64,000 nt of DNA, from IMG/VR virus record IMGVR_UViG_3300007352_000001, positions 177,427-241,426 of that record; one strand, given 5' to 3'. This document shows, one piece after another, positions 11,543 through 56,639 of the stretch. The translations under genes were made by a program, and so were the position numbers. Position 1 is the stretch's first letter. Each line of letters starts with the position of its first letter. The notes beneath the pieces were generated by a model, which ran no database searches, was not told the DNA's origin, and saw only the letters and a program-made list of their open reading frames with translations.

Positions 11543-11841
11543 TGGACGACATCAACACGCTGCGGGCACGTGTGGCGTCGATGCGGCAGTTGCACGCGCA
11601 GGCGCAGCAGGACGCCGCGGCGAAGACCGCGGTGGTGCACACACTCCTGGAGCAGCTGCAAACCGAGTTCGGCTGCACTAGCGTGGAAGAGGGACAGCAG
11701 CTCCTGCAGCAGCTCGATCAGAAGGCGTCGACGTTGACCACGACGCTCACGCAGCTGCTGGCGGCGGTGGAGCAACAACTGGGTGGGGTGGAACGTGCGG
11801 GAGCAAGTCACAGCGGTTCGGCGACGGTACGAGCGGCTTAG
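11539..11841 (+). CDS. small coiled-coil protein
   Basis: heptad-rich 100 aa ORF between SbcD and SbcC-C. Confidence 0.65.
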   Translation: MMDDINTLRARVASMRQLHAQAQQDAAAKTAVVHTLLEQLQTEFGCTSVEEGQQLLQQLDQKASTLTTTLTQLLAAVEQQLGGVERAGASHSGSATVRAA

Positions 11842-12415
11842 TGAACGCCAGCGGCAAGTTGCCGCGGAGTTGACCACGACCGCGGCCTCGCTCGCCGCGC
11901 TGGCCGAGCAGTCGCGCGTCGAGCAACTGGCGCACGACACGGTCACGGCGATCGACATCGTCTATCGCAAGCTCGCGCTCGATCGTGTCGAGCAGCTTGT
12001 GACCATCGGCCTGCAGGCGATCTTCGAGCACGACTACGCGTTCCGTTTCCACGTCGAGCCGAAACGTGGCCAGGCCGAGACGACGATCATCATCTCGGAC
12101 CAGGGGAAGGATCTCGACCCTACGACGGAGATGGGTGGTAGCGTCGTCGATGTCGTTTCCTTGCTGTTGCGTGTCGTGCTGTGGACGCAGATGCACGAGC
12201 GCTCGGCGCCGCTTTTCTTGCTTGACGAGCCTGCCCGCATGGTGTCGGCGCAGTACCGGCCTGCCTTGGCAGCGTTCCTCCAGCGCCTCTCGAAGGAGCT
12301 GCAGGTGCAGTTCTTCATCGTGACCCACGAGCCAGCCATCGCGTCGTCGGCGGACCGCGTCTTCGAGGTCACGAAGGACGGCCAAGGGGTAAGTCATGTG
12401 GGGATTCTGCGGTGA
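11783..12415 (+). CDS. SbcC/Rad50-like ATPase, C-terminal half
   Basis: degenerate signature MGGSVVDVVSLLLR; Walker B LFLLDEP; H-loop IVTHE. Confidence 0.85.
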   Translation: MGWNVREQVTAVRRRYERLSERQRQVAAELTTTAASLAALAEQSRVEQLAHDTVTAIDIVYRKLALDRVEQLVTIGLQAIFEHDYAFRFHVEPKRGQAETTIIISDQGKDLDPTTEMGGSVVDVVSLLLRVVLWTQMHERSAPLFLLDEPARMVSAQYRPALAAFLQRLSKELQVQFFIVTHEPAIASSADRVFEVTKDGQGVSHVGILR

Positions 12416-13715: not shown

Positions 13716-13982
13716 ATGGGGGACAAGACACGAGGGTTGTACGGCAAGTTCTACGTCGCGCGCGTGGACGAGTCCGACATGCCTGGTGGAAAGCACCAAG
13801 GATGCGACTACTTCGTGCTCGACCTCTCTCACGACCCGTACGCTGGTCCGGCGATCCAGGCGTACATCGACGCGTGCAAAGACGAGTACCCACTGCTCGC
13901 CGAGGATCTCCGCAAGAAGCACCTCGGTGAAAAACGTCCGGCGCAGGGAGTCGCCACGGACGCCGAACCGGAGGACGCATGA
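13716..13982 (+). CDS. conserved phage hypothetical protein
   Basis: GLYGKFYV...YFVLDL.HDPYA.PA..AY pattern; SD GGAG. Confidence 0.7.
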   Translation: MGDKTRGLYGKFYVARVDESDMPGGKHQGCDYFVLDLSHDPYAGPAIQAYIDACKDEYPLLAEDLRKKHLGEKRPAQGVATDAEPEDA

Positions 13983-15136
13983 CCAACGTCAACATCAAGC
14001 TGCCAATCCTCGACATTGAGGATTACGACATCCCGCACGAACGTGCCGGCCAGGTGAGCAACGAGATCCAAGGCTCGGTGCAGTACGCGTTCATCGGTTC
14101 CGGTCAGGGTGGTTGTCGCTTGGCGCGTGAGTTCTACCACCTCGGCTACCGCAAGACGCTCTGCTTGAACACGGCGCCGCAGGACCTGCTGCTGGTCGAC
14201 TTGCCGGATACGCAGAAGCTCCTGCTCGACATCGGTCAAGGCGGTGCCGGCAAGAACATGGAGCGTGGCGAGAAGGCCGCGGTGGCGCACCGGCAGGAGA
14301 TCTACGATCTCATGCGGCGAGTCTTCGGCAAGGTCGACCACATCATCATCTGCGCCTCGGCCGGTGGCGGCTCGGGTGGCGGGAGCGTGTTCGCGCTCAT
14401 CATGGTCGCCAAGCGGTACCTGCGTTACATCGGCTACGACGATGTCGACCAGCGCGTCGGCGTGATGGTGACGCTGCCGACGCGCGGCGAAGCCAGCTCG
14501 CCGAAGGTGGCGGTCAACGCCTACGACCTAGTGCAGCGGCTCTCTGATCTCGCCGAGGCCAAGCAGGTCACGCCGCTGATCATCATCGACAATGACAAGA
14601 TCAAGCAGCTGTACTCGGGACTGCCGGTGGCGACGTTCTGGCCGACGCTCAACAAGAACGTCGCGCAACTCTTCGACGCCTTCAATCGACTCTCGACGCA
14701 GAACTCGCCGTACACCACGTTCGATCCCGAGGACTACCGTACGATTATCACTGGCGGCGGTCACTGCATCTTCGGGCTCACGACCGTGAAGGGCATGGAC
14801 ACCGAGACGGTCGAGGAGACACGGATCTCGAACGCCCTGAAGGCCAACTTGGAGAAAACACTCCTGGCCGGAGGTTTCGATATCACCACGGCGACGCACG
14901 CGGCGTGCTGCGTGGTCGGCGGCGAGCAGATGTTCGCCCAGCAGGCCGGGCTTCAGGATGCGATCGAGTACGCGTTCGACACCCTGACGCAGATGACCGG
15001 GGAGGCGATGGTGCACCGCGGCATCTACCAATCGGAGCGTGAGCTGTTGCTCGCCTACACCATCTTGAGTGGACTCAAGCGACCTGATGAGCGGTACTTG
15101 GAGTTGAGCCGGCAGGCGCAGCGCGCATACCCATGA
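13979..15136 (+). CDS. tubulin/FtsZ-family GTPase (PhuZ/TubZ-like)
   Basis: FIGSGQGGCRLA (T1), GGAGKN, SAGGGSGGGS (T4 signature variant), IIIDND, FDPED. Confidence 0.88.
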   Translation: MTNVNIKLPILDIEDYDIPHERAGQVSNEIQGSVQYAFIGSGQGGCRLAREFYHLGYRKTLCLNTAPQDLLLVDLPDTQKLLLDIGQGGAGKNMERGEKAAVAHRQEIYDLMRRVFGKVDHIIICASAGGGSGGGSVFALIMVAKRYLRYIGYDDVDQRVGVMVTLPTRGEASSPKVAVNAYDLVQRLSDLAEAKQVTPLIIIDNDKIKQLYSGLPVATFWPTLNKNVAQLFDAFNRLSTQNSPYTTFDPEDYRTIITGGGHCIFGLTTVKGMDTETVEETRISNALKANLEKTLLAGGFDITTATHAACCVVGGEQMFAQQAGLQDAIEYAFDTLTQMTGEAMVHRGIYQSERELLLAYTILSGLKRPDERYLELSRQAQRAYP

Positions 15137-19812: not shown

Positions 19813-20760
19813 ATGAGCAACGCTGACGTGTACAAGAAGGTGACCGAGCGGGTCGTGGGCCTGCTCGAACAGGGAACGGTGCCGTGGCACAAGCCGTGGG
19901 TCGGCGGGCAGCGAGGCCTGCCCCGCAACCTGATCTCGAAGCGGCCGTACCACGGCTGCAACGTGTTCTTCCTCGCCGTGCAGCAGTACGAGTCGCCCTA
20001 CTGGCTGACCTTCCACCAGCTCAAGCAGCTCGCCGGCTGCGACCAGCCCTTCTGCAAGAAGCCGCACGAGCACGGGCTCGTGATCAAGGGCGAGAAGGGT
20101 ACCCCGATCGTGTTCTGGCGGACGCGGCAGTTCACGCAGGTCAACCAGGCGACGGGCGAGGATGAGACGGTCAACGTGCCGCTGGCGCGCATCTACACCG
20201 TCTTCAACGTCGCGCAGGTGACCGGCATCGAGGACAAGCTGCCCGATCGCGCCGCGCTGCCAGACAACGACCTCGCCCCGCTCGACGCGTGCGAGCGCAT
20301 CATCCACAACATGCCACAGCGCCCGGAGATTCGGCACCAGGAGCAGCGCGCGTACTACCGACCGCTTGCCGACTTCGTGAACCTGCCGCTCTTCGACACG
20401 TTCGAGTCGGCCGAGGCCTACTACTCGACGGCCTACCACGAGCTGGGCCACGCGACCGGTCACAAGTCGCGGTTGAACCGCGCGACGTTGAACGACCTCG
20501 TCGACTTCGGCGACACGAACTACTCGCAGGAGGAACTGGTCGCTGAGTTCACCGCGGCCTTTCTCTGCGGCATCGCCGGCATCGAGAACACGACGGTCAA
20601 CACGTCCGCGGCCTACCTGAAGGGCTGGATCAGTCGACTGCAGGCGGATCCGCAGCTGCTGACGCGCGCAGCGTCGCAGGCGCAGGCTGCCGCCGACTAC
20701 ATCTTGCACGTGCAGCCCGAGCAGGCGGTGGAGGGGGAGTCGGATGCCGTCGCGGAATAG
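19813..20760 (+). CDS. ardC: ArdC-family antirestriction/ssDNA-binding protein (DUF1738 plus zincin-like domain)
   Basis: GTVPWHKPW, PRN..S.RPY.G.N, WLTF.Q, KGEKG, VFNVAQ, HELGHATGH, YSQEELVAE, SAAYL.GW. Confidence 0.92.
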   Translation: MSNADVYKKVTERVVGLLEQGTVPWHKPWVGGQRGLPRNLISKRPYHGCNVFFLAVQQYESPYWLTFHQLKQLAGCDQPFCKKPHEHGLVIKGEKGTPIVFWRTRQFTQVNQATGEDETVNVPLARIYTVFNVAQVTGIEDKLPDRAALPDNDLAPLDACERIIHNMPQRPEIRHQEQRAYYRPLADFVNLPLFDTFESAEAYYSTAYHELGHATGHKSRLNRATLNDLVDFGDTNYSQEELVAEFTAAFLCGIAGIENTTVNTSAAYLKGWISRLQADPQLLTRAASQAQAAADYILHVQPEQAVEGESDAVAE

Positions 20761-28737: not shown

Positions 28738-29412
28738 ATGACACTGCAGGAGCGGGTGTTCAGGTTCATTGACTCGACGGCACTGCACGGCGCCACCGAC
28801 GACGAGATCGCGGCAGCATTGAAGCGCCAGCCTCAGAAGGCGAGCGCGAAGCGACAGGCGTTGTGGGTTCTCAACCAGCTGACGCAGGACGGGCGCACAC
28901 GTACTTCACGGACTGGGCAGCAGGAAACCGTCTGGGTAACGAAAGATGCGGTGCGCCGAGCATACGGACTGGCACCGCTGGTTCCGCTGCAGGGTACCTC
29001 TCGGCGCACTGATCTCGCCTCACGCCTCTCGTACGCCGCGGTCAAACCGACCTTGGCGAAGAGACACATGAGTACGCTCATGGCGCTCGCCGAGTACATC
29101 GCGGCGACGGGATCGAAGCCGACGGGATATGAGCTGCTTGAATATATCAAGGCACGCAGTGGTGCGCCGCTGCTGCTGGATGTGAACAGCGTGCGGCCGA
29201 ATCTCACCGGATTGAAGGATAGAGGGCTCGTCAAGAAGGTCGGGCCGCTTCGCCATTGCACGAAGTCTCCGACAGGCAAGCGAGCGAACGAGTGGCAGTT
29301 GACGGACAGTGGGCGCGCGATGCTGCAGAACGTCGCGCAAACGGATGAACCGGTTGTGGTTGAGGAGGTGGGGCATGCAGTTGGTGGAACCAAGGGTGCA
29401 TCTGATCGGTAA
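28738..29412 (+). CDS. putative DNA-binding protein with two winged-helix domains
   Basis: GATDDEIAAAL...; TDLASRLS..; TGYEL...SVRPNLTGL..RGLV. Confidence 0.6.
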   Translation: MTLQERVFRFIDSTALHGATDDEIAAALKRQPQKASAKRQALWVLNQLTQDGRTRTSRTGQQETVWVTKDAVRRAYGLAPLVPLQGTSRRTDLASRLSYAAVKPTLAKRHMSTLMALAEYIAATGSKPTGYELLEYIKARSGAPLLLDVNSVRPNLTGLKDRGLVKKVGPLRHCTKSPTGKRANEWQLTDSGRAMLQNVAQTDEPVVVEEVGHAVGGTKGASDR

Positions 29413-30172
29413 GCCGCAGTTGCAATGGGACGCAGTCAACAACTACCTGCACGACATTGGGGGTGAGGCGTGGTTCGATCGCATCGAACCGTTGTACCAG
29501 GCTGGCGACATCACCGACGCCGAGGCGATGGTCGAGTTCGCTGGTCGGCTCTGTTACCGCGCGTGGGCACCGGGCTTGAACGCGAACGTGACCAAGGTGC
29601 GCGAGGACAGCGGCGTGTACCTGCGCAACATCCTGCAGCAACGCCACGGCTCGGTGCTGGAGCACGCATACTGGATCTTCATCTTCCAAGACGTCAGCCG
29701 GGTCTGGACGCACGAGTGGGTGCGCCACCGCATGGGCGTCTCGATCAGCCAGGAGTCGCTGCGCTACGTGCGGCTCGACAAGCTGAAGATGTGGATCCCA
29801 CCATGGGCGCAGCAGGATCTGGAGTTCTTCAACCGCGCCGTCGCACTCGTCGAGGACATGGAGGCTTTCCAGGTCTGGATGGCCGAGCACTTCAACCTCG
29901 ATCGCGAGGGCATGCCCTTCGACGAGAAGAAGGCCAAGACGTCGTTCATGCGCCGCTTCGCGCCAGAGGGATTGGCGACGTCGATGGTGTGGGGCGGCAA
30001 CACGCGAGCGGTGCGCCACGTGCTGGAGATGCGCAGCGACACCGCGGCCGAGGAAGAGATGCGCCTTGTCACCGCGCAACTCGGACACATCATGCAGGAC
30101 GAAGCACCCAAGCTCTTCGGCGATTACGTCGTCGAGGACAATCACTTCAAGACGGAGTTCCGGAAGGTCTGA
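29375..30172 (+). CDS. thyX: FAD-dependent thymidylate synthase
   Basis: EFAGRLCY, HGSVLEH, SR..THE.VRHR..SISQESLRY (RHRx7S). Confidence 0.95.
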   Translation: MQLVEPRVHLIGKPQLQWDAVNNYLHDIGGEAWFDRIEPLYQAGDITDAEAMVEFAGRLCYRAWAPGLNANVTKVREDSGVYLRNILQQRHGSVLEHAYWIFIFQDVSRVWTHEWVRHRMGVSISQESLRYVRLDKLKMWIPPWAQQDLEFFNRAVALVEDMEAFQVWMAEHFNLDREGMPFDEKKAKTSFMRRFAPEGLATSMVWGGNTRAVRHVLEMRSDTAAEEEMRLVTAQLGHIMQDEAPKLFGDYVVEDNHFKTEFRKV

Positions 30173-42063: not shown

Positions 42064-42291
42064 GGCCCCTCCCACGTCCTAGACTGGGACGTCCTAGTAG
42101 CTGGCTAGTAGGTGCGGCTGGGCACATACCGGGGGCAGGGTGGCGTGCGCGACAGCGCCGCCGCCCGTCAGCTGACTGCTGTGCGTGACTCACCACACCC
42201 ACCCGCATTGACCCACCCATGCCGTTGATTTGGAGCGCACGCTCTTAGCGCGCTTCTTACTCGCTCGTCAAGCTCAACGTCCAAACAGCCG

Positions 42292-42435
42292 GGCTAGGTA
42301 GTCCGTACCTAGCCACCAACAAAGGTCGACCACGGGTCGACAAAACGGCCGGTACGCCGTGGTTCACCCCTGTATCGCAGGGAAACCCACTTCGGGAGAG
42401 GTGTCTCCAGCCTCTCCCGCAGCCGTTTTGGAGGG
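42292..42435 (+). promoter_or_regulatory. structured leader with multiple hairpins upstream of the secreted-protein block
   Basis: GGCTAGGTA/TACCTAGCC, GTCGACC/GGTCGAC, CCCTG/CAGGG, CGGGAGAGG/CCTCTCCCG, and long-range CAAAACGGC/GCCGTTTTG next to the SD. Confidence 0.5.
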
Positions 42436-42442
42436 CCACACC

Positions 42443-42928
42443 ATGCGTCGAGTCGATCCGCTGGAAGTGGACGTGCTCCTCGACCTCGCCGCTGCTGCAG
42501 GTCCTGGTGCCGCCACCCAGCTCGCTTCAGGCCGTTCGCTGTTCGATGTCAGCGAACGCGCTCAGTTCCTCGTGTCCTCGCAGGCTCTGGCCGAGGCTCT
42601 CGCCGATGTGCAGCCGCTCGTCGACGCGATGCCGCGCCACAGTGAAGGCGATCTGGACACGGCCATCGACCTGCAGGATGCCGCCGCGCAGCTGGGCAAG
42701 GTCATCCCGCGGTTGCAGCTCGCGATCCGTGCCACCGAGAGCATGCAGGAGCGTGCGGCGATCGTCGCCGTCCTCGACGCCGCGCTCGACGCACACCGCC
42801 AGCTGAACGAGTGGTCGAGCCGTGCGGCCGAGTACAACCCGCCGCACGCCGCCGAGATCATCCAGAACTTCCACGGCCTGGTCATGATGGCGAAGGACCT
42901 GGCCCAGCTGGACCAGAACTACCGGTGA
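42443..42928 (+). CDS. helical hypothetical protein
   Basis: GGAGGG SD. Confidence 0.7.
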   Translation: MRRVDPLEVDVLLDLAAAAGPGAATQLASGRSLFDVSERAQFLVSSQALAEALADVQPLVDAMPRHSEGDLDTAIDLQDAAAQLGKVIPRLQLAIRATESMQERAAIVAVLDAALDAHRQLNEWSSRAAEYNPPHAAEIIQNFHGLVMMAKDLAQLDQNYR

Positions 42929-43515
42929 GCACCATCCGCGCCCTGGTGTGCGCCGCAGCCTTGCTGCTGAGCGCACCGGCCTGGGCAGGGGAAATCTACC
43001 TGCACGCCGCGGGCGCCCTCACCAAGGGCTCTGGTGGATGCACACGGGTGCAGAACGACGGCACCGCCGGCCCGATCGTCTCGATGCAGTGCTCGCAGAC
43101 GGGCACGCAGGAGCTGTTCTGGTGGGTGCCGATCCCGTCGGACTTCGGCAGTACGATCACGCCGACGATCACCTACCACACCGGCTCGGTGTCGGCTGGC
43201 AACCTGTGCTTCCGGATCCGGCTGACGGCGTTCGCCACCGACGGCTCGGCAGCCAACATGCTGACGGCCGCGGCAGCCACCAACACGGTGACGATCACCG
43301 ATGCCAACCTGACCGCGGTGGTGAACTCGCCGAACCAAGGGGCGGGTACCTCGCTGACGCCGCAACAGCGCACCAGCGCAGGGCTCACCAGCTGCGCGGT
43401 GCAGAGCTGCCAGAACCTCTACGGCCTGGTGCAGGTCGAGCGCATGAACGACGGCAGCTGCAGCTCGAACCTCGCGACCAATGCGCAGGTCGACATGCTG
43501 CGGCTTGCCTACTGA
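42925..43515 (+). CDS. secreted Cys-rich beta protein, paralog 1
   Basis: signal peptide AWA/GEIY; CT...C...PIPSD...Y...C; ends MLRLAY. Confidence 0.75.
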   Translation: MSTIRALVCAAALLLSAPAWAGEIYLHAAGALTKGSGGCTRVQNDGTAGPIVSMQCSQTGTQELFWWVPIPSDFGSTITPTITYHTGSVSAGNLCFRIRLTAFATDGSAANMLTAAAATNTVTITDANLTAVVNSPNQGAGTSLTPQQRTSAGLTSCAVQSCQNLYGLVQVERMNDGSCSSNLATNAQVDMLRLAY

Positions 43516-43524
43516 CGAAAGGCG

Positions 43525-44109
43525 ATGCGGATGGATGCGGAGCGGTTGCTGCTGAAGGTCCGGAAGTTCGGTGACGTTCAGGCGGAACATGTGGCCTGGA
43601 CCGAGCCGTTGTCGTGGAACTCGGCGACTCCGGCCGGTGTTGGGTTCACCGAGCACAAGCTGTCGTTCATCGACGTGCTCAACCACGCCTTCCAGCTCTA
43701 CGCGCAGGGCGACGTGGTCCCCGACGTTGGGGATGAGCTGGTTGATGTCAGCCGCAAGGTCGCGAGCCGCGACCTCGTCTTCCTCGGCGAGCGCGCCACG
43801 TTCATCATCGAGACGCTGCCGGGGTTCATCATGCACCCGCCGCAGCAGCTCGGCAGTGCGACGCGCCTCGGCCGTCTGAACGGACACTGGACGGTGGTGC
43901 GGGAGTCCGCGTTGCCGCTGAACGAGTTCATCGTGGTGCACGTGCAGCCGCAGACGCGCACGGTGTTCGCCACGCCAGGCGTGGCCGGTAAGCAAGAAGA
44001 CATCGCGGAGTTTCTCCAGCGCCGCGCCGCCTCGCTGATCCAAGCGGTGGCCTCGACCAAGGCGCCGGCCAATCGACAGGTCAATCCCCACGCATCGTGC
44101 GCTGGGTGA
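43525..44109 (+). CDS. hypothetical protein
   Basis: 194 aa ORF interrupting the paralog array. Confidence 0.65.
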   Translation: MRMDAERLLLKVRKFGDVQAEHVAWTEPLSWNSATPAGVGFTEHKLSFIDVLNHAFQLYAQGDVVPDVGDELVDVSRKVASRDLVFLGERATFIIETLPGFIMHPPQQLGSATRLGRLNGHWTVVRESALPLNEFIVVHVQPQTRTVFATPGVAGKQEDIAEFLQRRAASLIQAVASTKAPANRQVNPHASCAG

Positions 44110-44118
44110 CGAGGTCTC

Positions 44119-44706
44119 ATGGGCGGGTGGCGGTGGTGGAGTGGAGTGGTTGTGGCCGTGGCACTGGGTGCTGCGGCGCCCGCCCATGCAGGCAAACTCG
44201 AACTGTGGGCTGACTCGGCCTACACGCTCTCGGGCTCGGGCTGCACGAAGGTCGTGAACAACGCCGCCTCGAACGAGGCGTACACGACCATCAACTGCCC
44301 GGATGCCGCGGGCGGGACCTTCGTGGTTCCGTTCGCGATCCCGGAAGTGGCCGCGGCCACGGGCTGGACCTACCGCATCCACTACGCGGTCTCGAACAAC
44401 TCGACCTCGTCGACGTGCGCCTGGGACGTGCAGCTCCAAGCGCAGACGAGCGACGGGACAGTGGTGATCACTGGCGGGCCGACGACCACGGTCACCGCGG
44501 GGCCGCGCGATCACACCGCCGGCAAGATCGACCTCTCGCCGACCAGCGCGGCGATGACCGGCATTCGCGACAGCCAAGCCGGCGCGAACTGCTCGGGATC
44601 CACCTGCACGGACACCGGGGGCGTCGCACTCGTCACGCTGAACAACACCAGCACGAGCGGCATCACCGGCACCTGCAACTTTCGGCTGTTGGAGATCACG
44701 TACTGA
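44119..44706 (+). CDS. secreted Cys-rich beta protein, paralog 2
   Basis: AHA/GKLE; CTK..TINC..GW...CAW..NCS..C..CNFRLLEITY. Confidence 0.8.
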   Translation: MGGWRWWSGVVVAVALGAAAPAHAGKLELWADSAYTLSGSGCTKVVNNAASNEAYTTINCPDAAGGTFVVPFAIPEVAAATGWTYRIHYAVSNNSTSSTCAWDVQLQAQTSDGTVVITGGPTTTVTAGPRDHTAGKIDLSPTSAAMTGIRDSQAGANCSGSTCTDTGGVALVTLNNTSTSGITGTCNFRLLEITY

Positions 44707-45290
44707 TGCGCTCACTGCTCACCACGCTGTGCTTCGCTGTGCTCGTGCTGGCTCAGCCGGCGTGGGCAGGACGGCTCTATCTCTTTGCCGAGAACGCCAT
44801 CCTGCCGTCGGGCTCGACGTGCACCAAGAACATCGAGATCCAGTCGGATCGCGCCTACACGACGATCAACTGCCCGCCGGGCGGCAACAACATCTTCGCG
44901 ATCCCGTTCCCGTTCCCAACCGATGCGCCGAGCACGGGATGGACGTTCCGCGTCCACTACCAGGTGAACCAGACCACCGCGTCGTCGCGCTGCGCGTGGG
45001 ACGTCACCATGAAGACGTTCCCCGACAACAGTGACGCCACGATCACCGGCGGCTCGGTCACCACGCTCCAGAGCACCTCGCAGACGCACACCGTCAACCG
45101 CCGGTACGTCTCCCCGGCGAGCGGCGCCATCAGCCAGATCCTCGGTCCGAGCGGCAGTCCCTGCACCGGCACGCCGTCGAACTGCGCGGATCTCAGCGCG
45201 GTGGCGAAGCTCGACATGAACGACGGATCGAGCACCAACATCAGCAACCCGAACAGCTGCAACTTCCGCATGCTGGAGGTTCGGTACTGA
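44706..45290 (+). CDS. secreted Cys-rich beta protein, paralog 3
   Basis: TGATG coupling; AWA/GRLY; ends CNFRMLEVRY. Confidence 0.8.
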   Translation: MRSLLTTLCFAVLVLAQPAWAGRLYLFAENAILPSGSTCTKNIEIQSDRAYTTINCPPGGNNIFAIPFPFPTDAPSTGWTFRVHYQVNQTTASSRCAWDVTMKTFPDNSDATITGGSVTTLQSTSQTHTVNRRYVSPASGAISQILGPSGSPCTGTPSNCADLSAVAKLDMNDGSSTNISNPNSCNFRMLEVRY

Positions 45291-45937
45291 TGCCGCGTTC
45301 GCTGTTTGCGAATAGCAAACGTGCCGGCGTCACGGGCCTTTTCTCCCTGTTGGGGTGTGCCCGTTTGCGGATTGCATACGCCGCGGCGCTGCTCGTGCTG
45401 GTCGCCACGCCGGCTCACGCCGGCCGCATCTACGTGTTCGCCGAGGCGTTCTACCTGACGACGACTTCGACGTGCACCAAGACGGTCAACTCGACCACGC
45501 AGAACTCGACGACGACGATCAACTGTCCGTCGAACGTGCTGACCACCGGCTTCCGCGCCAACGTGGCGTTCCCGCCCGATGCGCCGAACAGCTGGTCGTA
45601 CAGGGTCTGGTACACGACGCCGGACACGGCCTCGAACAAGTCGTGCAGCTGGCAGATCCAGGCGCGCTCGCGCCCCCACGACTCGCGCAACGACCTGGGC
45701 GGCGGTGAGGACACCGCTACCGTGATCGGTGGACCGATCCAACACGCCAACAACCGCCAGTACAAGACCGACATCTCGACGGCGACGGCCGTCTACAACA
45801 CGGCGACTTCGGCCAACTGTTCGAGCACGGCGTGCCAGGACACCGAGGTGCGCCTCAACATCGCGCTCATTCCGGTGCTCTTCAGTGCCGACTCCGCGAG
45901 CGAGTGCGACTTCCGATATCTGGAGATCGAGTACTGA
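45290..45937 (+). CDS. secreted Cys-rich beta protein, paralog 4
   Basis: AHA/GRIY; ends CDFRYLEIEY. Confidence 0.8.
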   Translation: MPRSLFANSKRAGVTGLFSLLGCARLRIAYAAALLVLVATPAHAGRIYVFAEAFYLTTTSTCTKTVNSTTQNSTTTINCPSNVLTTGFRANVAFPPDAPNSWSYRVWYTTPDTASNKSCSWQIQARSRPHDSRNDLGGGEDTATVIGGPIQHANNRQYKTDISTATAVYNTATSANCSSTACQDTEVRLNIALIPVLFSADSASECDFRYLEIEY

Positions 45938-46521
45938 TGCGCACGCTACGGATTCTCTTCGTCGCGCTCGCTGTACTCCTCGTGGGCTCCAAGGCTCACG
46001 CCGGCCGCATCTACGGCTGGGCTGAGGCAGCGAAGCTCACCTCATCGTCCTCGGGTTGCACGCTCACCGACAACCAGGGTGTGCGCTCGGGCGGCAACTA
46101 CGCCTACCGCACGATGAACTGCACCGACGGTGCGAACCGCGAGTTCGTGCTGCCGTTGTGGATCCCGCCCGATGCGCCCAACACGGGCTGGACGGCGCGC
46201 GTGCATTACGAGACGACCGACACCAGCGCCAGCAAGGTCTGCGCGTGGAACGTGTCGATTGGCGCCTACAAGGACGGCGCCTCGCCGCTCGGCTCGCAAG
46301 GGTCGACCACGGCGATCGCTGGTAGCTCGCGCACGCACGTGGCTGGCACGCGCTACATCACCAGCCCGTCGGCGACCTTCTCGCTCTACGATGTGCTCGC
46401 GGCTGGCGCCTGCGCCTCGACCAACTGCCTGCAGAAGACGGCCAAGGCCTACGTCACGCTCGACAGCTCGGCCACCACCGCCACGGGGTGTGACTTCCGC
46501 ATGCTGGAGGTTCGGTACTGA
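45937..46521 (+). CDS. secreted Cys-rich beta protein, paralog 5
   Basis: AHA/GRIY; ends CDFRMLEVRY. Confidence 0.8.
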   Translation: MRTLRILFVALAVLLVGSKAHAGRIYGWAEAAKLTSSSSGCTLTDNQGVRSGGNYAYRTMNCTDGANREFVLPLWIPPDAPNTGWTARVHYETTDTSASKVCAWNVSIGAYKDGASPLGSQGSTTAIAGSSRTHVAGTRYITSPSATFSLYDVLAAGACASTNCLQKTAKAYVTLDSSATTATGCDFRMLEVRY

Positions 46522-47126
46522 TGCGCACGCTGAAGCTCCTGGTCGTGCTCGCGCTGTGCCTCCTGCCAGCCACCGCGCACGCCGTCACCTACTTCGCCTT
46601 CGCCGAAGACGCCACCCTCGCCACGGCGACTGACATCTGCGCCATCACTGAGCACCAGGGCACGTCGAGCAACTACACTACGGTCGACTGCACGGGCTCG
46701 GGCGAGACGCGTGTCGCCATCCCGCTCTACCGCCCGGTGTACGACCCGAGCAGCTGGCCGAAGGCGGCGACGGTGAAGGTCCACTACGAGACGCCCGACA
46801 CCAGCTCGAACACGCACTGCGACTGGGACGTGGCGATCTACATCATCAACACGTACACCTCGTCGGGCACGGTGCAGCCGGCCCTGGTGAATGCGTCTTC
46901 GGTGTCGACGACGGCCGTCACGGGCACAACCCAGACGCACGCGGCGGACACGCGCTACATCACGCCCGCCACCTCGACGTTCAACTTGAAGGATCCAGCT
47001 GGCTCGGACTGCAGCAACGGCAATGCGGGCTGCGCCGATGGCGAGGCCGTGGTCATCATCGACTGGGACGACGCGTCGTCGACCGCGAGCGAGTGCCGGC
47101 TGCGGGCGGTGGAGGTGAACTACTGA
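46521..47126 (+). CDS. secreted Cys-rich beta protein, paralog 6
   Basis: AHA/VTYF; ends CRLRAVEVNY. Confidence 0.8.
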   Translation: MRTLKLLVVLALCLLPATAHAVTYFAFAEDATLATATDICAITEHQGTSSNYTTVDCTGSGETRVAIPLYRPVYDPSSWPKAATVKVHYETPDTSSNTHCDWDVAIYIINTYTSSGTVQPALVNASSVSTTAVTGTTQTHAADTRYITPATSTFNLKDPAGSDCSNGNAGCADGEAVVIIDWDDASSTASECRLRAVEVNY

Positions 47127-47800
47127 TGCGCTCGCACATCGCTGAGCTGCGGTTGTTCGTGAAGCAGCTGCATGAGCTGGGCCGTCTGCTCGGGATCCCG
47201 AAGCAGGCGATGCGCCAGTACATCGGCAGCCGCCTGTTCGTCGTGGCACTGGTCGCGCTCCTGGGTGGCTTCGGTGAAGCGCACGCTGGCATGATCCAGC
47301 TTGGCGCCGAGGCCGCACAGTTCGCGAGCCCCGCGCCTGCCACGTGCACCAAGGTCACGACCGCGGCAAGCAACTACACCGACACCTCGATTAACTGCAC
47401 GTCGTCTGGATCAGACGTGAAGTTCTACCTGCCGGTGGCGATCCCACCAGATTACACCGGCGGCTCGGGCATCTTCACCTCGGTGTACTACACGTCGCCT
47501 GACCCGTTCACGAACCGGCGGTGCTACTGGGCCTTGGCGCTCTCGGCCCTGCGCGACGGTGCCACCGCCGCCTCGCTCGATACCACGACGGTGTTCACGG
47601 CCGGCCCGCAGGTTCAGCACGTGGCGGGTCGACGGTACTGGGCGCAGAACAACGTGCTCCCGTACGACGTGCTAGCCGGCGCGAACTGCTCGGGCAGCAA
47701 CTGCTCGGATACTGAGGCCATTTTGGAGGTCACGTTGCGCGCCTCGCCGAACACCTCGGCGACGCAGTGCAACTTCGACTTCGTCACCCTTCGCTACTGA
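47126..47800 (+). CDS. secreted Cys-rich beta protein, paralog 7
   Basis: AHA/GMIQ; ends CNFDFVTLRY. Confidence 0.8.
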   Translation: MRSHIAELRLFVKQLHELGRLLGIPKQAMRQYIGSRLFVVALVALLGGFGEAHAGMIQLGAEAAQFASPAPATCTKVTTAASNYTDTSINCTSSGSDVKFYLPVAIPPDYTGGSGIFTSVYYTSPDPFTNRRCYWALALSALRDGATAASLDTTTVFTAGPQVQHVAGRRYWAQNNVLPYDVLAGANCSGSNCSDTEAILEVTLRASPNTSATQCNFDFVTLRY

Positions 47801-47816
47801 GAAAGGGACGTACGCC

Positions 47817-48266
47817 ATGTGGAAGGTTCTGGTGCAGGTTGTGGCTGGGGCAGCGATGCCCTTCATTTTGCTGGGGGCGACACTGGCGTATGTGCCGCCT
47901 CAGTACGTGATCGGCTCTGCCGCGCCACCGGAGTGCAAGGCGTGCAGCTGCCCCGGCGACCTGGACGGCAACGGTGCAGTGTCGGTAGGCGAGCTGATCG
48001 CGGCGGTGAACTCGCTGCTGCACGGTTGCCCAGCGCCGGCCCCGACGTTCACGCCGATCACCAAGCGCACCGCGGTCGTCTTCTGCCCAGGGGACTGCAA
48101 CGGAGATGGAGTGGTGACCATCGCAGAGAAGGACCAGGCGATCGCGATCATCAACGGGGCGCCCCTCTCGACGTGCATGGCCGCGGACGCCAACGGCGAC
48201 GGCCGTGTGCGCAGCAACGACATCACCATGATCATCCAGGCGATCAACGACGGCTGCCCGCAATGA
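47817..48266 (+). CDS. secreted or membrane protein with dockerin-like Ca-binding repeats
   Basis: CPGDLDGNGAVSVGELIAAVN, CPGDCNGDGVVTIAE, ADANGDGRVRSNDI..IIQA. Confidence 0.75.
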   Translation: MWKVLVQVVAGAAMPFILLGATLAYVPPQYVIGSAAPPECKACSCPGDLDGNGAVSVGELIAAVNSLLHGCPAPAPTFTPITKRTAVVFCPGDCNGDGVVTIAEKDQAIAIINGAPLSTCMAADANGDGRVRSNDITMIIQAINDGCPQ

Positions 48267-48700
48267 GCACATTGTCGGCTGAGTTCCGCATGTTCCCGCC
48301 GACCTACGCGGACATGTACGGGTTCCCGCGGCAGCCGCCCAGCTCGGGCTGGCAGCAGTGGCAGCAGCAACAATGGGTCGACGACCGCACCTCGGTGCAG
48401 CCGCCGTACGTGCCGTCGTACGGGGAACCCATCTGGATCGTGCAGCCGTCGGTCACGGTGCCGATGGTGCCGTACCCGCATCCGCAGAAGCTGCCGACGG
48501 TGCCGTCACCAACGCCGTTCCAGCCACAGCGGACCTACACCGTCGAGGAGCTGGAACTGATGCTGGCTGCGGCGCAGCAGCACGCTCTGCACGACGGCGC
48601 CCCGAGCGATCACGTCCCCACGCCTTTCGAGCACTTGCAGAAGGGGCAGATCGGCTACGCCTCGCGTCGCGACGTCGTCGAGCGCGACGGCGCACCGTGA
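48263..48700 (+). CDS. Pro/Gln-rich protein with HLQxGQxGYASR motif
   Basis: ATGA coupling; FEHLQKGQIGYASR. Confidence 0.6.
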   Translation: MSTLSAEFRMFPPTYADMYGFPRQPPSSGWQQWQQQQWVDDRTSVQPPYVPSYGEPIWIVQPSVTVPMVPYPHPQKLPTVPSPTPFQPQRTYTVEELELMLAAAQQHALHDGAPSDHVPTPFEHLQKGQIGYASRRDVVERDGAP

Positions 48701-48870
48701 GGATTCAGGGCCGGCTCCGTACCCCGAAGCCCGTCGTCTTCCACGATGAGGAGTGCACGGTGCGGTTCAACGAGCACCTGCAACCTGGCCAGGTCGGCTA
48801 CGCGTCACGTGAGGGAACACATGGCTGGACCGCTGCTCGATCCGACTCGCCCGCACCACCCGTCGCTTGA
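48697..48870 (+). CDS. small protein with HLQxGQxGYASR motif
   Basis: GTGA coupling; FNEHLQPGQVGYASR. Confidence 0.55.
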   Translation: MRIQGRLRTPKPVVFHDEECTVRFNEHLQPGQVGYASREGTHGWTAARSDSPAPPVA

Positions 48871-49177
48871 CGACCTAGTCGATCCGAACTGTCACCGCCT
48901 GGTTCGCCACTTCTTCGAGAAGCCGCGGACACCTAGCGCCGACGGCGTCGCCTTCGATCGTGACGGCAAGCGCCCGTTCAACTTCCACCTGCAGCGCGGG
49001 CAGGTGGGCTACGCCAGTCGCACCGTCGTCGACACGGCGATCGGCACGGTGGCGGTGAGTACGCCGGAGTGCGGGACCGTGCCGCAGCTGGTCACCAACG
49101 GACCGCCGCTCACGAACAACCCACTGCTCGACATCGCCAACCGGCGCATCCGTGCACTGACACACCGTGAGGAGTGA
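48821..49177 (+). CDS. hypothetical protein with HLQxGQxGYASR motif
   Basis: GAGGG SD; FNFHLQRGQVGYASR. Confidence 0.6.
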   Translation: MAGPLLDPTRPHHPSLDDLVDPNCHRLVRHFFEKPRTPSADGVAFDRDGKRPFNFHLQRGQVGYASRTVVDTAIGTVAVSTPECGTVPQLVTNGPPLTNNPLLDIANRRIRALTHREE

Positions 49178-55892: not shown

Positions 55893-55966
55893 GCCCCGAT
55901 GGCTCAGTCTGGTAGAGCGGCTGACTTTGGATCAGCAGGTCGCTGGTTCAAATCCAGCTCGGGGTG
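55893..55966 (+). tRNA. tRNA-Gln(UUG)
   Basis: cloverleaf; anticodon arm GCTGA-CTTTGGA-TCAGC; T loop TTCAAAT; G1-U72, G73; no encoded CCA. Confidence 0.85.
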
Positions 55967-55969
55967 CTT

Positions 55970-56042
55970 GGGTCGATAGCTCAAATGGGAGAGCGCCTGT
56001 TTTGCAAGCAGGGGGTTTGGGGTTCAAGTCCCCGTCGATCCA
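55970..56042 (+). tRNA. tRNA-Ala(UGC)
   Basis: CCTGT-TTTGCAA-GCAGG; G3-U70 and A73 Ala identity elements. Confidence 0.9.
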
Positions 56043-56050
56043 CTTCTCGA

Positions 56051-56123
56051 TCCCCGGTAGCTCAGATGGAAGAGCGCTCGCCTACGAAGCGACAGGTCGC
56101 TGGTTCGACTCCAGTCCGGGGAA
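56051..56123 (+). tRNA. tRNA-Arg(ACG)
   Basis: TCGC-CTACGAA-GCGA; TCCCCGG/CCGGGGA acceptor; T loop TTCGACT. Confidence 0.85.
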
Positions 56124-56138
56124 CTGCACACACGATGG

Positions 56139-56213
56139 TCCCCGGTAGCTCAGCCTGGCTAGAGCATGCGCCCGATAAGCGCAGAGTCGTCGGTTCAAAT
56201 CCGACTCGGGGAA
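56139..56213 (+). tRNA. tRNA-Ile(GAU), atypical C33
   Basis: TGCGC-CCGATAA-GCGCA; T loop TTCAAAT. Confidence 0.8.
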
Positions 56214-56217
56214 CTGA

Positions 56218-56304
56218 TGCGGAGTACCCGAGTTGGTAGCAGGGAGCGGCCTGTTAAGCCGTTGGGCGTAAGCCCCGTCGTAGGTTCGAGTCCTACCTCC
56301 GCAG
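56218..56304 (+). tRNA. tRNA-Asn(GUU) with long variable arm
   Basis: TGCGGAG/CTCCGCA acceptor, G73; GCGGC-CTGTTAA-GCCGT; V-arm GGGC-GTAA-GCCC; T loop TTCGAGT. Confidence 0.8.
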
Positions 56305-56639
56305 CCTTTTCTCCTCCTCTGCTTTTCGTAGCTCCTGCACGCGCTTCCACAGGTGCGGGAAGCGCTGCTGTAGGTCAGGTGAGCGTTCGAGGTCCTGGAT
56401 GGCCTCGCGCACGAGGGGCGCGAGCCAGTCGCGGTCTTCAGTCATCATCATCTCCTGAGACCAGTATCTCACGAAGGTTTCCACCGCCGACCCACCAGGC
56501 TGTGGGCACGGTTACGGCGGCGTCTCTGTGCAAGAGGCGCCGCTAGATCTCTCGCTCGTCCACCAGGTGTGGAAGGAGCATCCGGTGGCGTCGTCCGAGC
56601 TATGCTTGGCGGCGCTTCCAGTCAACGTCTGGAGGACGT

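What the first reader, a model, noticed from the sequence alone, without database searches (positions are those of the whole stretch)
42925..47800. Coupled array of seven diversified, secreted, disulfide-rich paralogs ending in Tyr
Seen: seven ~195-225 aa ORFs (42925, 44119, 44706, 45290, 45937, 46521, 47126). Each has a Sec-type signal peptide (AHA or AWA cleavage) and a shared scaffold: G-x-I/L-Y..AE, C-T-K, T-I-N-C, P-x-D..W..V-x-Y, C-x-W, H..RY..P, C-S...C-x-D, and a C-terminal strand C(N/D)FR.LE..Y-stop. Paralog 1 is the most divergent. Loops between these anchors are highly variable. The last six are chained by TGATG overlaps. Known: virion structural proteins normally lack signal peptides. 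Chaperone-usher/Csu pilins have an N-terminal disulfide and a terminal beta-strand with Tyr near the end, but no usher or chaperone is in this window. Inference: a phage-encoded exported repertoire on one scaffold with variable loops. It could be a pilus-like or surface polymer, receptor-masking/superinfection-exclusion factors, or a panel of inhibitors or binders. I do not recognise the family.
Basis: partly seen in the sequence, partly recalled or inferred. Interest (0 to 1): 0.85.

Follow-up and report, generated by a model that had tools for sequence, protein, structure and literature searches.

The report
Exported copies of a tail-fibre tip
A huge uncultivated phage carries seven back-to-back genes for small, disulfide-bonded proteins with export signals. 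They are relatives of the tip domain of phage tail fibres, so the phage probably places fibre-tip-like binders in the envelope of the cell it infects; what they bind is unknown.

Summary
Seven ORFs (42925-47800, + strand) encode 194-224 aa paralogs (21-42% identical). Each has a Sec/SPase-I-type N-terminus (AHA/AWA then G) and ends in Tyr; P2-P7 have six matching conserved Cys, while P1 has two of them displaced. P2-P7 are chained by five TGATG overlaps.

They belong to an unannotated family: about 74 members in a profile search of 1.84 billion proteins, with no Pfam, PHROG, NCBIfam or PADLOC match. All informative contexts are phage, usually arrays of 2-4.

The AF2 model (pLDDT 85) is a complete 10-strand jelly-roll, not an incomplete pilin fold. 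Profile-profile comparison (99%, E 2e-18) and Foldseek (TM 0.75) link it to a signal-less, Cys-poor domain. That domain sits at the extreme C-terminus of tail-fibre proteins (EBPR siphovirus 2 gp74, cyanophage S-CRM01 g26, a Bcep22-type fibre).

Cys positions change in pairs, implying three disulfides and folding outside the cytoplasm. Orthologs are under purifying selection (dN/dS 0.07-0.21).

An exported dockerin-like Ca-binding protein is adjacent in four phage lineages and fused into the fold in a fifth.

Best reading: exported fibre-tip-derived envelope binders, possibly receptor masking. The function is inferred, not shown.

The parts
42443..42928 (+). First gene of the operon: 161 aa, no signal peptide, no family match. 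Its stop overlaps the P1 start (GTGA).
   Evidence: Sequence read: GGAGG lies 8 nt upstream of the ATG. No hits. Not similar to the gene at the same position in L008.
42925..43515 (+). Paralog P1 (196 aa, GTG start, signal peptide ...APAWA|GEIY). 'Type B': the third Cys is shifted by one column and the last Cys moved about 4-6 columns upstream.
   Evidence: The Cys pattern 98/177 is shared with P0009, P0029 and P0032. It groups with them in the tree.
43525..44109 (+). Unrelated 194-aa ORF between P1 and P2. No signal peptide, GC3 0.86, orphan.
44119..44706 (+). Paralog P2 (195 aa, ...APAHA|GKLE), type A.
   Evidence: GAGG upstream of the ATG.
44706..45290 (+). Paralog P3 (194 aa, ...QPAWA|GRLY), type A. 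TGATG-coupled to P2.
45290..45937 (+). Paralog P4 (215 aa, ...TPAHA|GRIY), type A. TGATG-coupled to P3. A 26-aa extension precedes the hydrophobic core.
45937..46521 (+). Paralog P5 (194 aa, ...SKAHA|GRIY), type A. TGATG-coupled to P4. This is the protein that was modelled.
46521..47126 (+). Paralog P6 (201 aa, ...ATAHA|VTYF), type A. TGATG-coupled to P5. The ortholog in L006 is 91% identical in the mature part but only 33% identical in the signal peptide.
47126..47800 (+). Paralog P7 (224 aa from the coupled ATG; 196 aa from the internal ATG at 47210; ...EAHA|GMIQ), type A. It carries a 30-aa insertion after MRSHI that is absent from the L006 ortholog.
47817..48266 (+). Exported or membrane-anchored dockerin-like protein (149 aa). 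It has an N-terminal hydrophobic segment, eight Cys and three EF-hand-type Ca loops (DLDGNG, DCNGDG, DANGDG).
   Evidence: Pfam Dockerin_1 at 37.7 bits against a cut-off of 22.9, plus EF-hand_1. The ortholog sits in the same position in L006 with dN/dS 0.14. Such repeats occur nowhere else in the window.

Best explanation
**What it is.** The seven genes encode Sec-exported, signal-peptidase-I-processed jelly-roll proteins of about 172-180 aa, each held by three disulfides. They are an exported offshoot of the domain that forms the distal C-terminal tip of many phage tail fibres.

**How it is expressed.** They are made as one translationally coupled operon together with an exported dockerin-like Ca-binding protein.

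**Proposed function (inferred).**
- During infection they fold outside the cytoplasm (in the periplasm, or on the wall or surface if the host has a single membrane).
- There they act as binding modules for envelope ligands of the kind that fibre tips recognise. They may be free or tethered through the dockerin-like protein.
- The most likely consequence is occupation or blocking of phage receptors. That would prevent superinfection and stop progeny being lost on debris, a 'receptor interference' function.
- The seven old, individually conserved paralogs (one type B, six type A) would cover different ligands or act as hetero-assemblies.

**Shown:** the ORFs and their coupling, signal-peptide features, disulfide covariation, the fold, homology to fibre tips, purifying selection, recurrence in phage arrays, and the linkage to dockerin-like modules.

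**Inferred:** actual export and cleavage, binding, the ligand, and the exclusion phenotype.
For: **Export**
- Across 74 family members the segment before the domain has a median of 22 residues (IQR 21-24).
- K/R lies in the first 8 residues in 71 of 74; Ala is at -1 in 50 of 73 and at -3 in 48 of 73; Gly is at +1 in 47 of 73.
- The signal peptide of the P6 ortholog has diverged to 33% identity yet keeps these features, while the mature part is 91% identical.

**Disulfides**
- Cys columns 41+58 and 155+160 are present or absent together.
- Cys 97 goes with Cys 181 (31 of 31), Cys 98 with 174-178, and Cys 95 with 178.
- Fibre-type homologs have few Cys, 1-4 per protein.

**Fold**
- AF2 gives pLDDT 84.7 and pTM 0.84 for a 10-strand sandwich.
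- BFVD matches reach TM 0.74-0.76 to phage proteins of 422, 213 and 388 aa, and to the ends of giant-virus collagen-repeat proteins.
- The Atlas structural neighbours are Uroviricota clusters, one of them 35% collagen-repeat.

**Homology to fibre tips**
- hhalign of exported against signal-less members gives probability 99%, E 1.9e-18 over 156 columns.
- A profile built only from signal-less members hits six of the seven paralogs (all but P6) at 1e-8 to 3e-14.
- P0081 has a PHROG tail-fibre N-terminus (E 6.5e-12) and lies next to a central-fibre-J-like protein.
- EBPR siphovirus 2 gp74 lies in a tail module. S-CRM01 g26 has a collagen stalk and lies in a fibre cluster.
- In 18 IMG/VR contigs the domain lies within a few residues of the C-terminus of a 160-1074 aa ORF in 17 cases (L047 is the exception).

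**Phage context and arrays**
- The window belongs to a 241-kb IMG/VR contig. L007 has a large terminase subunit (E 1.5e-64).
- Family genes lie beside endolysin or holin-like genes, or between PAAR and Baseplate_J.
- Arrays of 2-4 copies occur in L001, L002, L007, L008 and L026.

**Conservation:** dN/dS is 0.21 for P6 and 0.07 for P7.

**Dockerin link:** a dockerin-like gene is adjacent in the window/L006, L007 and L009/L025, and is inserted into the family fold in L008:2653-3666.

**Precedent:** exported phage proteins that block the phage's own receptor are known. T5 Llp does this, also preventing adsorption to lysed fragments (PMC9586334).
Against: - No experiment or binding prediction supports any ligand.
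- The host is unknown. If it has an outer membrane, a soluble periplasmic protein cannot reach surface receptors without a further secretion step. Signal-peptide lengths of about 22 aa look more like those of diderm hosts.
- In this window the array lies among replication, nucleotide-metabolism and orphan genes, not next to a recognisable receptor-binding protein gene. No fibre-type copy is present in the 64 kb.
- Known exclusion proteins (Llp, Cor) are lipoproteins unrelated to receptor-binding proteins. No phage case of a fibre-tip-derived exclusion factor is known to me.
- P4 and P7 have atypically long N-terminal extensions that might impair export.
- The model of the natural dockerin fusion gave no usable interface (insert pLDDT below 50).
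- No SignalP run was possible, so the signal-peptide call rests on hand rules.
Confidence: 0.35

Rival explanations
1. Extracytoplasmic scaffold or adhesin module. The jelly-rolls are lectin/CBM-like binders that assemble with dockerin-like modules, and in some phages with very large exported proteins carrying Pro-Thr linkers. Together they would form a Ca-dependent cell-surface complex that binds or remodels polysaccharide (capsule, EPS, sheath, biofilm matrix). This would benefit the infected cell or help release. It is a binding function without receptor masking.
For: - PDB fold neighbours are PP2 lectin, CBM35, CBM6, CBM15 and Eph ligand-binding domains.
- Dockerin-like modules recur next to the family and are fused into it once.
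- L007, L009/L025 and L026 place family genes among 486-1283 aa proteins with signal peptides and Pro-Thr linkers. One of these has a DNRLRE domain (29 bits, below its cut-off of 34).
Against: - TM-scores to lectins and CBMs are only 0.4-0.5.
- There is no sequence match to Cohesin or to any CBM family.
- No large exported enzymes flank the array in this window.
- This reading does not explain why the closest relatives are fibre tips.
Confidence: 0.2
2. Lysis or egress accessory. The exported proteins act on the wall or outer layers at the end of infection. They would play a role analogous to spanins or LysB for an unusual envelope, or regulate lysis timing.
For: - The family lies 0-4 kb from endolysins and small membrane proteins in three lineages.
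- L007: M15 endolysin, then a membrane-anchored dockerin protein, then family genes.
- L009/L025: family gene, 56-57 aa dockerin-like protein, membrane proteins, then a GH19 endolysin with PHROG 'endolysin' E 4e-31.
- L008: two small membrane proteins directly downstream.
Against: - No endolysin or holin was recognised near the array in this window. The only hint is a sub-threshold holin hit on the dockerin-like protein (17.3 bits against a cut-off of 27.8).
- Seven diverged copies are hard to justify for a lysis step.
- There is no lipobox and no enzymatic motif.
- Late-gene neighbourhoods also commonly hold unrelated accessory genes.
Confidence: 0.12
3. Virion-associated after all. The exported tips would be added to particles outside the cytoplasm, for example captured through the dockerin-like module at or after lysis. 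They would serve as exchangeable host-range modules. Alternatively, the hydrophobic N-termini are not signal peptides.
For: - The family is homologous to fibre tips.
- In one myovirus the genes sit between PAAR and Baseplate_J. In L026 they follow an adaptor-like gene.
Against: - Tailed-phage particles assemble in the cytoplasm, where three disulfides would not normally form.
- The AxA/G signature is family-wide, and the signal peptide evolves fast while keeping its features.
- No shaft or attachment domain is present.
- I know of no precedent for it.
Confidence: 0.08
4. Pilus-like polymer built by donor-strand exchange.
For: Only the N-terminal disulfide and the terminal strand that ends in an aromatic residue.
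Against: - The fold is a complete jelly-roll with its own last strand.
- No Fimbrial, PapD or usher match was found, and no ORF in the window is long enough for an usher.
- The nearest folds are phage fibre tips.
- Only 38 of 74 family members end in an aromatic residue.
Confidence: 0.03

Closest known systems
C-terminal tip domain of short phage tail fibres (EBPR siphovirus 2 gp74, AEI71090.1; cyanophage S-CRM01 g26, AEC52973.1; metagenomic fibre P0081 with a Bcep22-type N-terminus). This domain is itself not in Pfam or PHROGs.
   Same: Homologous jelly-roll domain: hhalign 99%, E 1.9e-18. Foldseek TM is 0.74-0.76 to BFVD entries of 213 and 388 aa, the lengths of g26 and gp74. The strand order and the PxD..W..V.Y and terminal strand motifs are shared.
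   Different: Fibre versions sit at the very end of 160-1074 aa proteins with shafts or collagen stalks. They have no signal peptide and few Cys. The window proteins are the domain alone behind a signal peptide, with three added disulfides, in tandem arrays.
Superinfection-exclusion lipoproteins that inactivate the phage's own receptor (T5 Llp; Cor of phi80/T1-like phages)
   Same: They are small, phage-encoded and exported. They act in the envelope of the infected cell to stop superinfection and adsorption to lysed fragments (PMC9586334). This is the proposed way of working.
   Different: Llp is a single lipoprotein with a lipobox that binds FhuA from the periplasm, and it is unrelated to receptor-binding proteins. 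Here there is no lipobox, the fold is different, seven paralogs are present, and no receptor is known. The resemblance is one of proposed function only.
Cohesin-dockerin modules of cellulosomes
   Same: A genuine Dockerin_1 match lies next to the array: two Ca-binding repeats above the Pfam cut-off, plus a third EF-hand loop. Cohesins are also small jelly-roll sandwiches (my own knowledge). A natural fusion of the two module types exists in L008.
   Different: There is no Cohesin match at E up to 1. No cohesin appears among the 50 best PDB fold matches. No interaction was shown, because the fusion model is uninformative.
Lectin/CBM-type jelly-rolls (phloem lectin PP2, CBM35, CBM6, Eph receptor ligand-binding domain)
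   Same: Same general beta-sandwich class (Foldseek E 7e-5 to 2e-3).
   Different: TM is only 0.4-0.5 with rmsd 5-9 A. No sequence relationship or shared ligand-binding residues could be shown.
Chaperone-usher / Csu pilins
   Same: Signal peptide, an N-terminal disulfide, and a C-terminal strand with an aromatic end.
   Different: The fold is complete, no chaperone or usher is present, and the structural neighbours are different.
Receptor interference by retroviral Env-derived genes (my own knowledge, not tested here)
   Same: Conceptually the same. A copy of the virus's own receptor-binding module is routed through the secretory pathway, where it occupies the receptor.
   Different: The viruses and cells are different, and no evidence for such a mechanism exists here.

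Membership tests
Sec/SPase-I secretory proteins | Positively charged n-region, uncharged hydrophobic h-region, small residues at -3 and -1 | tested here: met
   All seven read this way. Family-wide: K/R in the first 8 residues in 71 of 74, Ala at -1 in 50 of 73, Ala at -3 in 48 of 73, median length 22. These are hand rules; SignalP was not available.
Sec/SPase-I secretory proteins | Actual export and cleavage | not testable with these tools
   Indirect support only: paired Cys covariation implies disulfides.
Bacterial lipoproteins (Llp/Cor-type exclusion factors) | Lipobox L-x-x-C at the cleavage site | tested here: not met
   The cleavage regions are AHA|G, AWA|G and AHA|V, with no Cys at +1.
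Phage tail-fibre tip domain (gp74/g26 type) | Sequence-profile homology of the domain | tested here: met
   hhalign 99%, E 1.9e-18. Reciprocal HMM hits at 1e-8 to 3e-14 for six of the seven paralogs (not P6).
Phage tail-fibre tip domain (gp74/g26 type) | Same fold | tested here: met
   TM 0.74-0.76, rmsd about 3 A, to BFVD phage proteins. Atlas TM 0.76-0.77 to Uroviricota clusters.
Phage tail-fibre proteins (virion components) | N-terminal shaft or attachment region, and no export signal | tested here: not met
   The domain starts directly after the signal peptide.
Phage tail-fibre proteins (virion components) | Gene located in the tail module | tested here: inconclusive
   Not so in this window: the neighbours are orphans and no structural hits were found. 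It is so in one myovirus and possibly in L026.
Chaperone-usher pilins | Incomplete Ig fold that needs a donor strand | tested here: not met
   The model is a complete 10-strand jelly-roll, pTM 0.84.
Chaperone-usher pilins | Adjacent chaperone and usher genes | tested here: not met
   No ORF above about 600 aa exists in the window. The ten operon ORFs scanned, including three flanking ones, gave no Fimbrial, PapD or usher hit.
Cohesin (dockerin partner) | Match to the Cohesin family or a cohesin-like fold | tested here: not met
   No Pfam hit at E up to 1. No cohesin among the top 50 PDB fold matches.
Cohesin (dockerin partner) | Ca-dependent binding to a dockerin | not testable with these tools
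   No multimer prediction is available. The model of the L008 natural fusion has pLDDT below 50 in the insert.
Dockerin type I (the neighbouring gene 47817-48266) | Two Ca-binding F-hand repeats matching PF00404 above the gathering score | tested here: met
   37.7 bits against a cut-off of 22.9, with full-length profile coverage.
Diversity-generating (DGR-type) variable proteins | Near-identical template and variable DNA repeats, with hypervariation between close relatives | tested here: not met
   Only short repeats at the conserved motifs, 60-92% identical. Orthologs are 91-94% identical with dN/dS 0.07-0.21. A reverse transcriptase was not searched for specifically.

The most novel reading that the evidence does not exclude
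Phages practise 'receptor interference' with their own adsorption hardware. A fibre-tip domain was copied, given a signal peptide and disulfides, and multiplied into panels. These panels are tethered in the envelope by a phage-encoded dockerin-type Ca module, a viral cohesin-dockerin-like system. There they occupy the receptors of the infected cell. The B-then-A gene order and the seven conserved paralogs would reflect a multi-receptor or hetero-oligomeric device.
Probability: 0.2. Interest if true: 0.8.

Novelty: new variant of a known kind. Interest (0 to 1): 0.62.

Why it matters
Exported phage proteins that act on the envelope of the infected cell are few, and most were found by genetics in model phages.

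This is a sizeable family: about 74 representatives at 50% identity. Every informative genomic context was an uncultivated phage, and the family has no annotation. Its origin can be traced to the receptor-recognition end of tail fibres.

If the proteins bind what fibre tips bind, they would be a new and bioinformatically recognisable class of superinfection-exclusion or progeny-protection factor. They would also be a natural source of small, stable, disulfide-bonded binding domains whose specificities mirror those of phage receptor-binding proteins.

The repeated pairing with dockerin-like modules, including one natural fusion, would also be the first hint of a phage-encoded Ca-dependent tethering system.

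Even without a function, two results are directly usable for annotation. One is that the fibre-tip domain itself is an unrecognised family, found within a few residues of the C-terminus of 160-1074 aa viral ORFs. The other is the exported-type profile, which marks accessory genes rather than virion genes.

Tried and rejected
**Searches that found nothing**
- A word-indexed search of 5.8 billion proteins with P5, and with the 37-sequence profile, returned only the window's own protein plus two members. It lacks the sensitivity for this family. The exhaustive profile search was what found it.
- tblastn of three exported members (P5, P0029, P0008) against 50,697 GenBank phages gave no match.
- Back-translated C-terminal motif scans gave nothing. 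GTDB genomes returned 0 hits, then 12 chance hits that all failed the family HMM. JGI metagenome contigs returned 0 hits.
- So no cellular genome or prophage host was identified. The pattern was narrow, so absence is not shown.
In IMG/VR the motif found only the window's own contig.

**Ideas tested and weakened or dropped**
- 'The C-terminal LE motif exists only because it encodes the Shine-Dalgarno sequence of the next gene.' In the window, GGAG does lie inside the L-E codons at all five coupled junctions, and P1 and P7, which lack a coupled successor, have no Glu there. But the LE(I/V)xY motif is common in the family elsewhere. It is at most a secondary constraint.
- 'Variable loops, constant strands' is only weakly supported.
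- A recent lineage-specific expansion is not supported. The paralogs are 21-42% identical and interleave with other phages' members in a poorly resolved tree.

**Uninformative attempts**
- The model of the L008 dockerin fusion, meant to reveal an interface, has a low-confidence insert.
- Host inference is inconclusive. ThyX is 60% identical to that of Streptomyces jumbo phages. The helicase is closest to Microbacterium and Acinetobacter phages, and TubZ to Bacillus phage G.
- Promoter and terminator scans gave nothing above background.
- Literature searches found no description of the family.
- My recollection that a 'GGDLxGxxPxP' motif in the large L007 proteins marks tail fibres could not be confirmed with PHROGs, so I do not use it.

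Full report
**1. The observation**

The seven ORFs are real and lie where stated.
- Mature parts are 21-42% identical. P1 is the outlier.
- The five junctions from P2 to P7 are all TGATG. Each has GGAG 9-10 nt upstream, lying inside the Leu-Glu codons of the preceding gene.
- P1 overlaps the stop of a 161-aa upstream gene as GTGA.
- An unrelated 194-aa ORF separates P1 from P2.
- A 149-aa gene follows P7 after 16 nt, and its own stop overlaps the next start as ATGA. The array is therefore part of a longer, tightly packed + strand operon that starts after a 367-nt divergent intergenic region at about 42076-42442.
- A family HMM finds exactly seven copies in the 64 kb.
- DNA repeats in the region are only the conserved motifs, recurring every 584-647 nt. 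There are no long near-identical copies.

**2. Setting**

- The window is the last 64 kb of IMG/VR contig IMGVR_UViG_3300007352_000001, which is 241,426 bp. GC content is about 65%.
- Recognisable genes are typical of a very large phage: a PIF1-type helicase, SbcC/SbcD-like pieces, a TubZ/PhuZ-type tubulin, ArdC, ThyX, an Rv2179c-like exonuclease, a methyltransferase and five clustered tRNAs.
- Most other ORFs are orphans, and no structural gene was recognised in the window.
- The host is unknown.

**3. A real, unannotated family**

- None of the seven matches Pfam, PHROGs, NCBIfam, PADLOC or any PDB sequence.
- An exhaustive profile search of 1.84 billion cluster representatives gave 88 hits: 30 at E below 1e-10 and 8 at E below 1e-30.
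- About 74 hits are 170-240 aa proteins in which the domain starts at around residue 22.
- In these, the leading segment has K/R in the first eight residues in 71 of 74. Its median length is 22. Ala is at -1 in 50 of 73 and at -3 in 48 of 73, and Gly is at +1 in 47 of 73. This is the Sec/signal-peptidase-I pattern. There is no lipobox and no twin-arginine motif.
- In a related phage fragment (L006, 83-88% nt identity) the P6 ortholog is 91% identical in the mature part. It is only 33% identical in the signal peptide, which nevertheless keeps the same design.

**4. Disulfides**

On an HMM alignment of the 74 members, Cys residues come and go in pairs.
- Columns 41 and 58 are present or absent together, or are replaced together by another pair.
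- Columns 155 and 160 occur together in nearly all members.
- Column 97 goes with column 181 (31 of 31). A Cys shifted to column 98 goes with one at 174-178, and a Cys at 95 goes with 178.
- This defines three bonds: C1-C2, C3-C6 and C4-C5. It also defines two subtypes: type A (97/181; P2-P7) and type B (98/175-177; P1).
- Paired conservation of this kind is expected for proteins that fold outside the cytoplasm.
- Arrays in the window, L007 and L008 all start with a type B gene followed by type A genes. The split is therefore old and both types are kept.

**5. Fold**

- With only the seven paralogs as the alignment, AF2 gives a confident model of mature P5: pLDDT 84.7, pTM 0.84. It is a 10-strand beta-sandwich whose last strand is the C-terminal ..FRMLEVRY.
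- Against the PDB only generic jelly-rolls appear, at TM 0.4-0.5: phloem lectin PP2, Eph ligand-binding domains, CBM35, CBM6 and CBM15.
- Against predicted viral structures the matches are much better, at TM 0.74-0.76 and rmsd about 3 A. They are phage proteins of 422, 213 and 388 aa, and the ends of giant-virus collagen-repeat proteins.
- The ESM Atlas gives the same picture: Uroviricota clusters, one of which is rich in collagen repeats.
- This excludes an incomplete pilin fold.

**6. Origin: a tail-fibre tip domain**

- A minority of the profile hits lack a signal peptide and have only 1-4 Cys. They carry the domain after other sequence.
- P0081 has an N-terminus matching PHROG tail-fibre families (E 6.5e-12) and the tail fibres of Burkholderia phages Bcep22, DC1 and BcepIL02. 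It lies next to a protein matching central tail fibre J.
- P0066 matches a short-tail-fibre PHROG.
- A profile-profile comparison of exported against signal-less members gives 99% probability, E 1.9e-18, over 156 columns.
- A profile made only from signal-less members hits six of the seven window paralogs (all but P6) at 1e-8 to 3e-14, and hits nothing else in the window.
- In GenBank phages the signal-less domain is the C-terminus of EBPR siphovirus 2 gp74 (388 aa, just downstream of a 'similar to tail protein' gene). It is also the C-terminus of cyanophage S-CRM01 g26 (213 aa).
- S-CRM01 g26 has a typical fibre N-terminus and a short G-X-Y collagen stalk. It sits in a cluster of collagen-repeat genes ahead of the gp13/gp14 neck genes.
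- Their lengths equal those of BFVD hits 2 and 3. I infer that these are the same proteins.
- In 18 further IMG/VR contigs the domain lies within a few residues of the C-terminus of a 160-1074 aa ORF in all but one.
- The family in the window is therefore an exported, disulfide-stabilised, stand-alone derivative of a fibre-tip domain. That domain is itself absent from the domain databases.

**7. Genomic habits of the exported type**

Every informative context is a phage.
- L007 has a large terminase subunit (E 1.5e-64). It carries an M15 peptidase, then a membrane-anchored 364-aa dockerin protein, then a type B and a type A gene, with further divergent copies. These are interleaved with 622- and 1283-aa proteins that have signal peptides and Pro-Thr linkers.
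- L009 and L025 (49- and 106-kb contigs) place one copy after 836- and about 1100-aa signal-peptide proteins. A 56-57 aa protein follows, translationally coupled; it is a hydrophobic leader plus a single dockerin-type repeat. Then come membrane proteins and a GH19 endolysin.
- L008 (44% GC) has four copies. One of them carries two dockerin-type repeats inserted into a loop of the jelly-roll.
- A 57-62 kb myovirus has two copies between its PAAR and Baseplate_J genes.
- L026 has two copies after an adaptor-like gene, again among other signal-peptide proteins.
- Short contigs show two or three tandem copies.
- Seven is the largest array seen.
- No exported-type member was found in 50,697 GenBank phages with three queries. 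None was found in GTDB genomes with a narrow motif scan.

**8. Evolutionary mode**

- Between the window and L006, dN/dS is 0.21 for mature P6, 0.07 for mature P7 and 0.14 for the dockerin-like gene. It is 0.76 for the next gene downstream.
- Each paralog is therefore individually conserved. The diversity is ancient rather than ongoing.
- A maximum-likelihood tree is poorly resolved. It places P1 with type B members of other phages, pairs P2 with P3, and interleaves the rest with homologs from other phages.
- Sequence divergence is almost as high in the strands as in the loops.

**9. The dockerin-like neighbour**

- Gene 47817-48266 matches Dockerin_1 above the Pfam threshold and has a third EF-hand loop. 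It also has an N-terminal hydrophobic segment and eight Cys.
- Such repeats occur nowhere else in the window or in the fetched flanks, except beside or inside family genes.
- Adjacency in four lineages (window/L006, L007, L009/L025, plus the fusion in L008) argues for a functional link.
- The jelly-roll shows no sequence or top-ranked structural similarity to cohesins. The model of the fusion protein is uninformative in the insert.

**10. How it most likely works**

What is shown:
- A translationally coupled operon of secretory-type, disulfide-bonded, fibre-tip-derived jelly-rolls together with a dockerin-like exported protein.
- The family is conserved and phage-specific as far as sampled.

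What is inferred:
- The proteins are exported during infection and bind envelope components, as fibre tips do.
- The consequence I consider most likely (0.35) is receptor occupation. This would block superinfection and prevent progeny from sticking to debris. T5 Llp provides this service by a different structure and route (PMC9586334).

Rivals:
- A lectin/dockerin surface scaffold acting on polysaccharide (0.2).
- A lysis or egress accessory (0.12).
- Extracytoplasmic addition to virions (0.08).
- A pilus-like polymer (0.03).
- The remainder is 'something else'.

The main weaknesses are the unknown host envelope type, the absence of any binding evidence, and the array's position away from recognisable tail genes in this phage.

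**11. Novelty and verdict**

- The kind of thing, a phage accessory protein exported to the envelope, is known. So is the fold class.
- Three aspects are new: the family itself, its derivation from a fibre-tip domain, and its expansion into arrays with a type B/type A organisation. A fourth is its recurrent coupling to dockerin-like modules.
- I rate it a new variant of a known kind, with interest 0.62.
- The most novel reading not excluded is a phage 'receptor interference' device tethered by a viral dockerin system (probability about 0.2, interest 0.8 if true).

Noticed in passing
window 48263-49177 (+): Three short consecutive ORFs in changing frames (48263-48700, about 48700-48870, 48701-49177) each contain the motif LQxGQ(I/V)GYASR. 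The first is ATGA-coupled to the dockerin-like gene. Its L006 ortholog is only 51% identical (dN/dS 0.76). This is a second small paralog set of unknown function, or possibly a frameshifted gene.
   Followed up: partly
window 47141-47230 (inside P7): P7 carries a 30-aa insertion (AELRLFVKQLHELGRLLGIPKQAMRQYIGS) after MRSHI that the L006 ortholog lacks. It pushes the hydrophobic core 34 residues from the coupled start. An internal ATG at 47210 would give a normal signal peptide. P4 has a comparable 26-aa N-terminal extension.
   Followed up: partly
window 45265-45299 and 46496-46530: The P3/P4 and P5/P6 junctions share an identical 35-nt stretch (TCCGCATGCTGGAGGTTCGGTACTGATG plus flanks). This is the best-conserved DNA in the array. 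It may reflect constraint on the Shine-Dalgarno sequence and the coupling, or a local gene conversion.
   Followed up: no
window 13979-15136 (+): A TubZ/PhuZ-type tubulin (Pfam Tubulin plus TubZ-like_C). Its only GenBank phage match is Bacillus phage G, at 24% identity.
   Followed up: no
window 9594-12415 (+): SbcC-like ATPase pieces (AAA_23 and SMC_N at 9594-10568; SMC_N C-terminal part at 11783-12415) flank an SbcD-like phosphoesterase (10499-11542). The nuclease-ATPase gene looks split or rearranged.
   Followed up: no
window 55893-56306 (+): A tight cluster of five tRNA genes (Gln-TTG, Ala-TGC, Arg-ACG, Ile-GAT, Asn-GTT).
   Followed up: no
window 29309-30172 (+): ThyX is 60% identical to that of 186-kb Streptomyces phages (Satis, Kradal and others). 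This is much closer than any other gene tested. It is either a weak hint to an actinobacterial host or a horizontally shared gene.
   Followed up: partly
L007:7785-14278; L009:3433-12390; L026:5022-9172: Phages carrying the family also encode several very large proteins (486-1283 aa) with signal peptides and Pro-Thr-rich linkers. One has a sub-threshold DNRLRE domain. These phages appear to have a whole exported-protein module, of which the jelly-roll family is one part.
   Followed up: partly
L008:2653-3666: A natural fusion: a family member with a Cys-rich segment of about 130 aa, containing two dockerin-type repeats, inserted between the second and third strands of the jelly-roll.
   Followed up: partly
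window 19813-20760 (+): An ArdC-like anti-restriction protein with a zincin metallopeptidase domain (ArdcN plus MPTase-PolyVal). This is more usual on conjugative plasmids than in phages.
   Followed up: no
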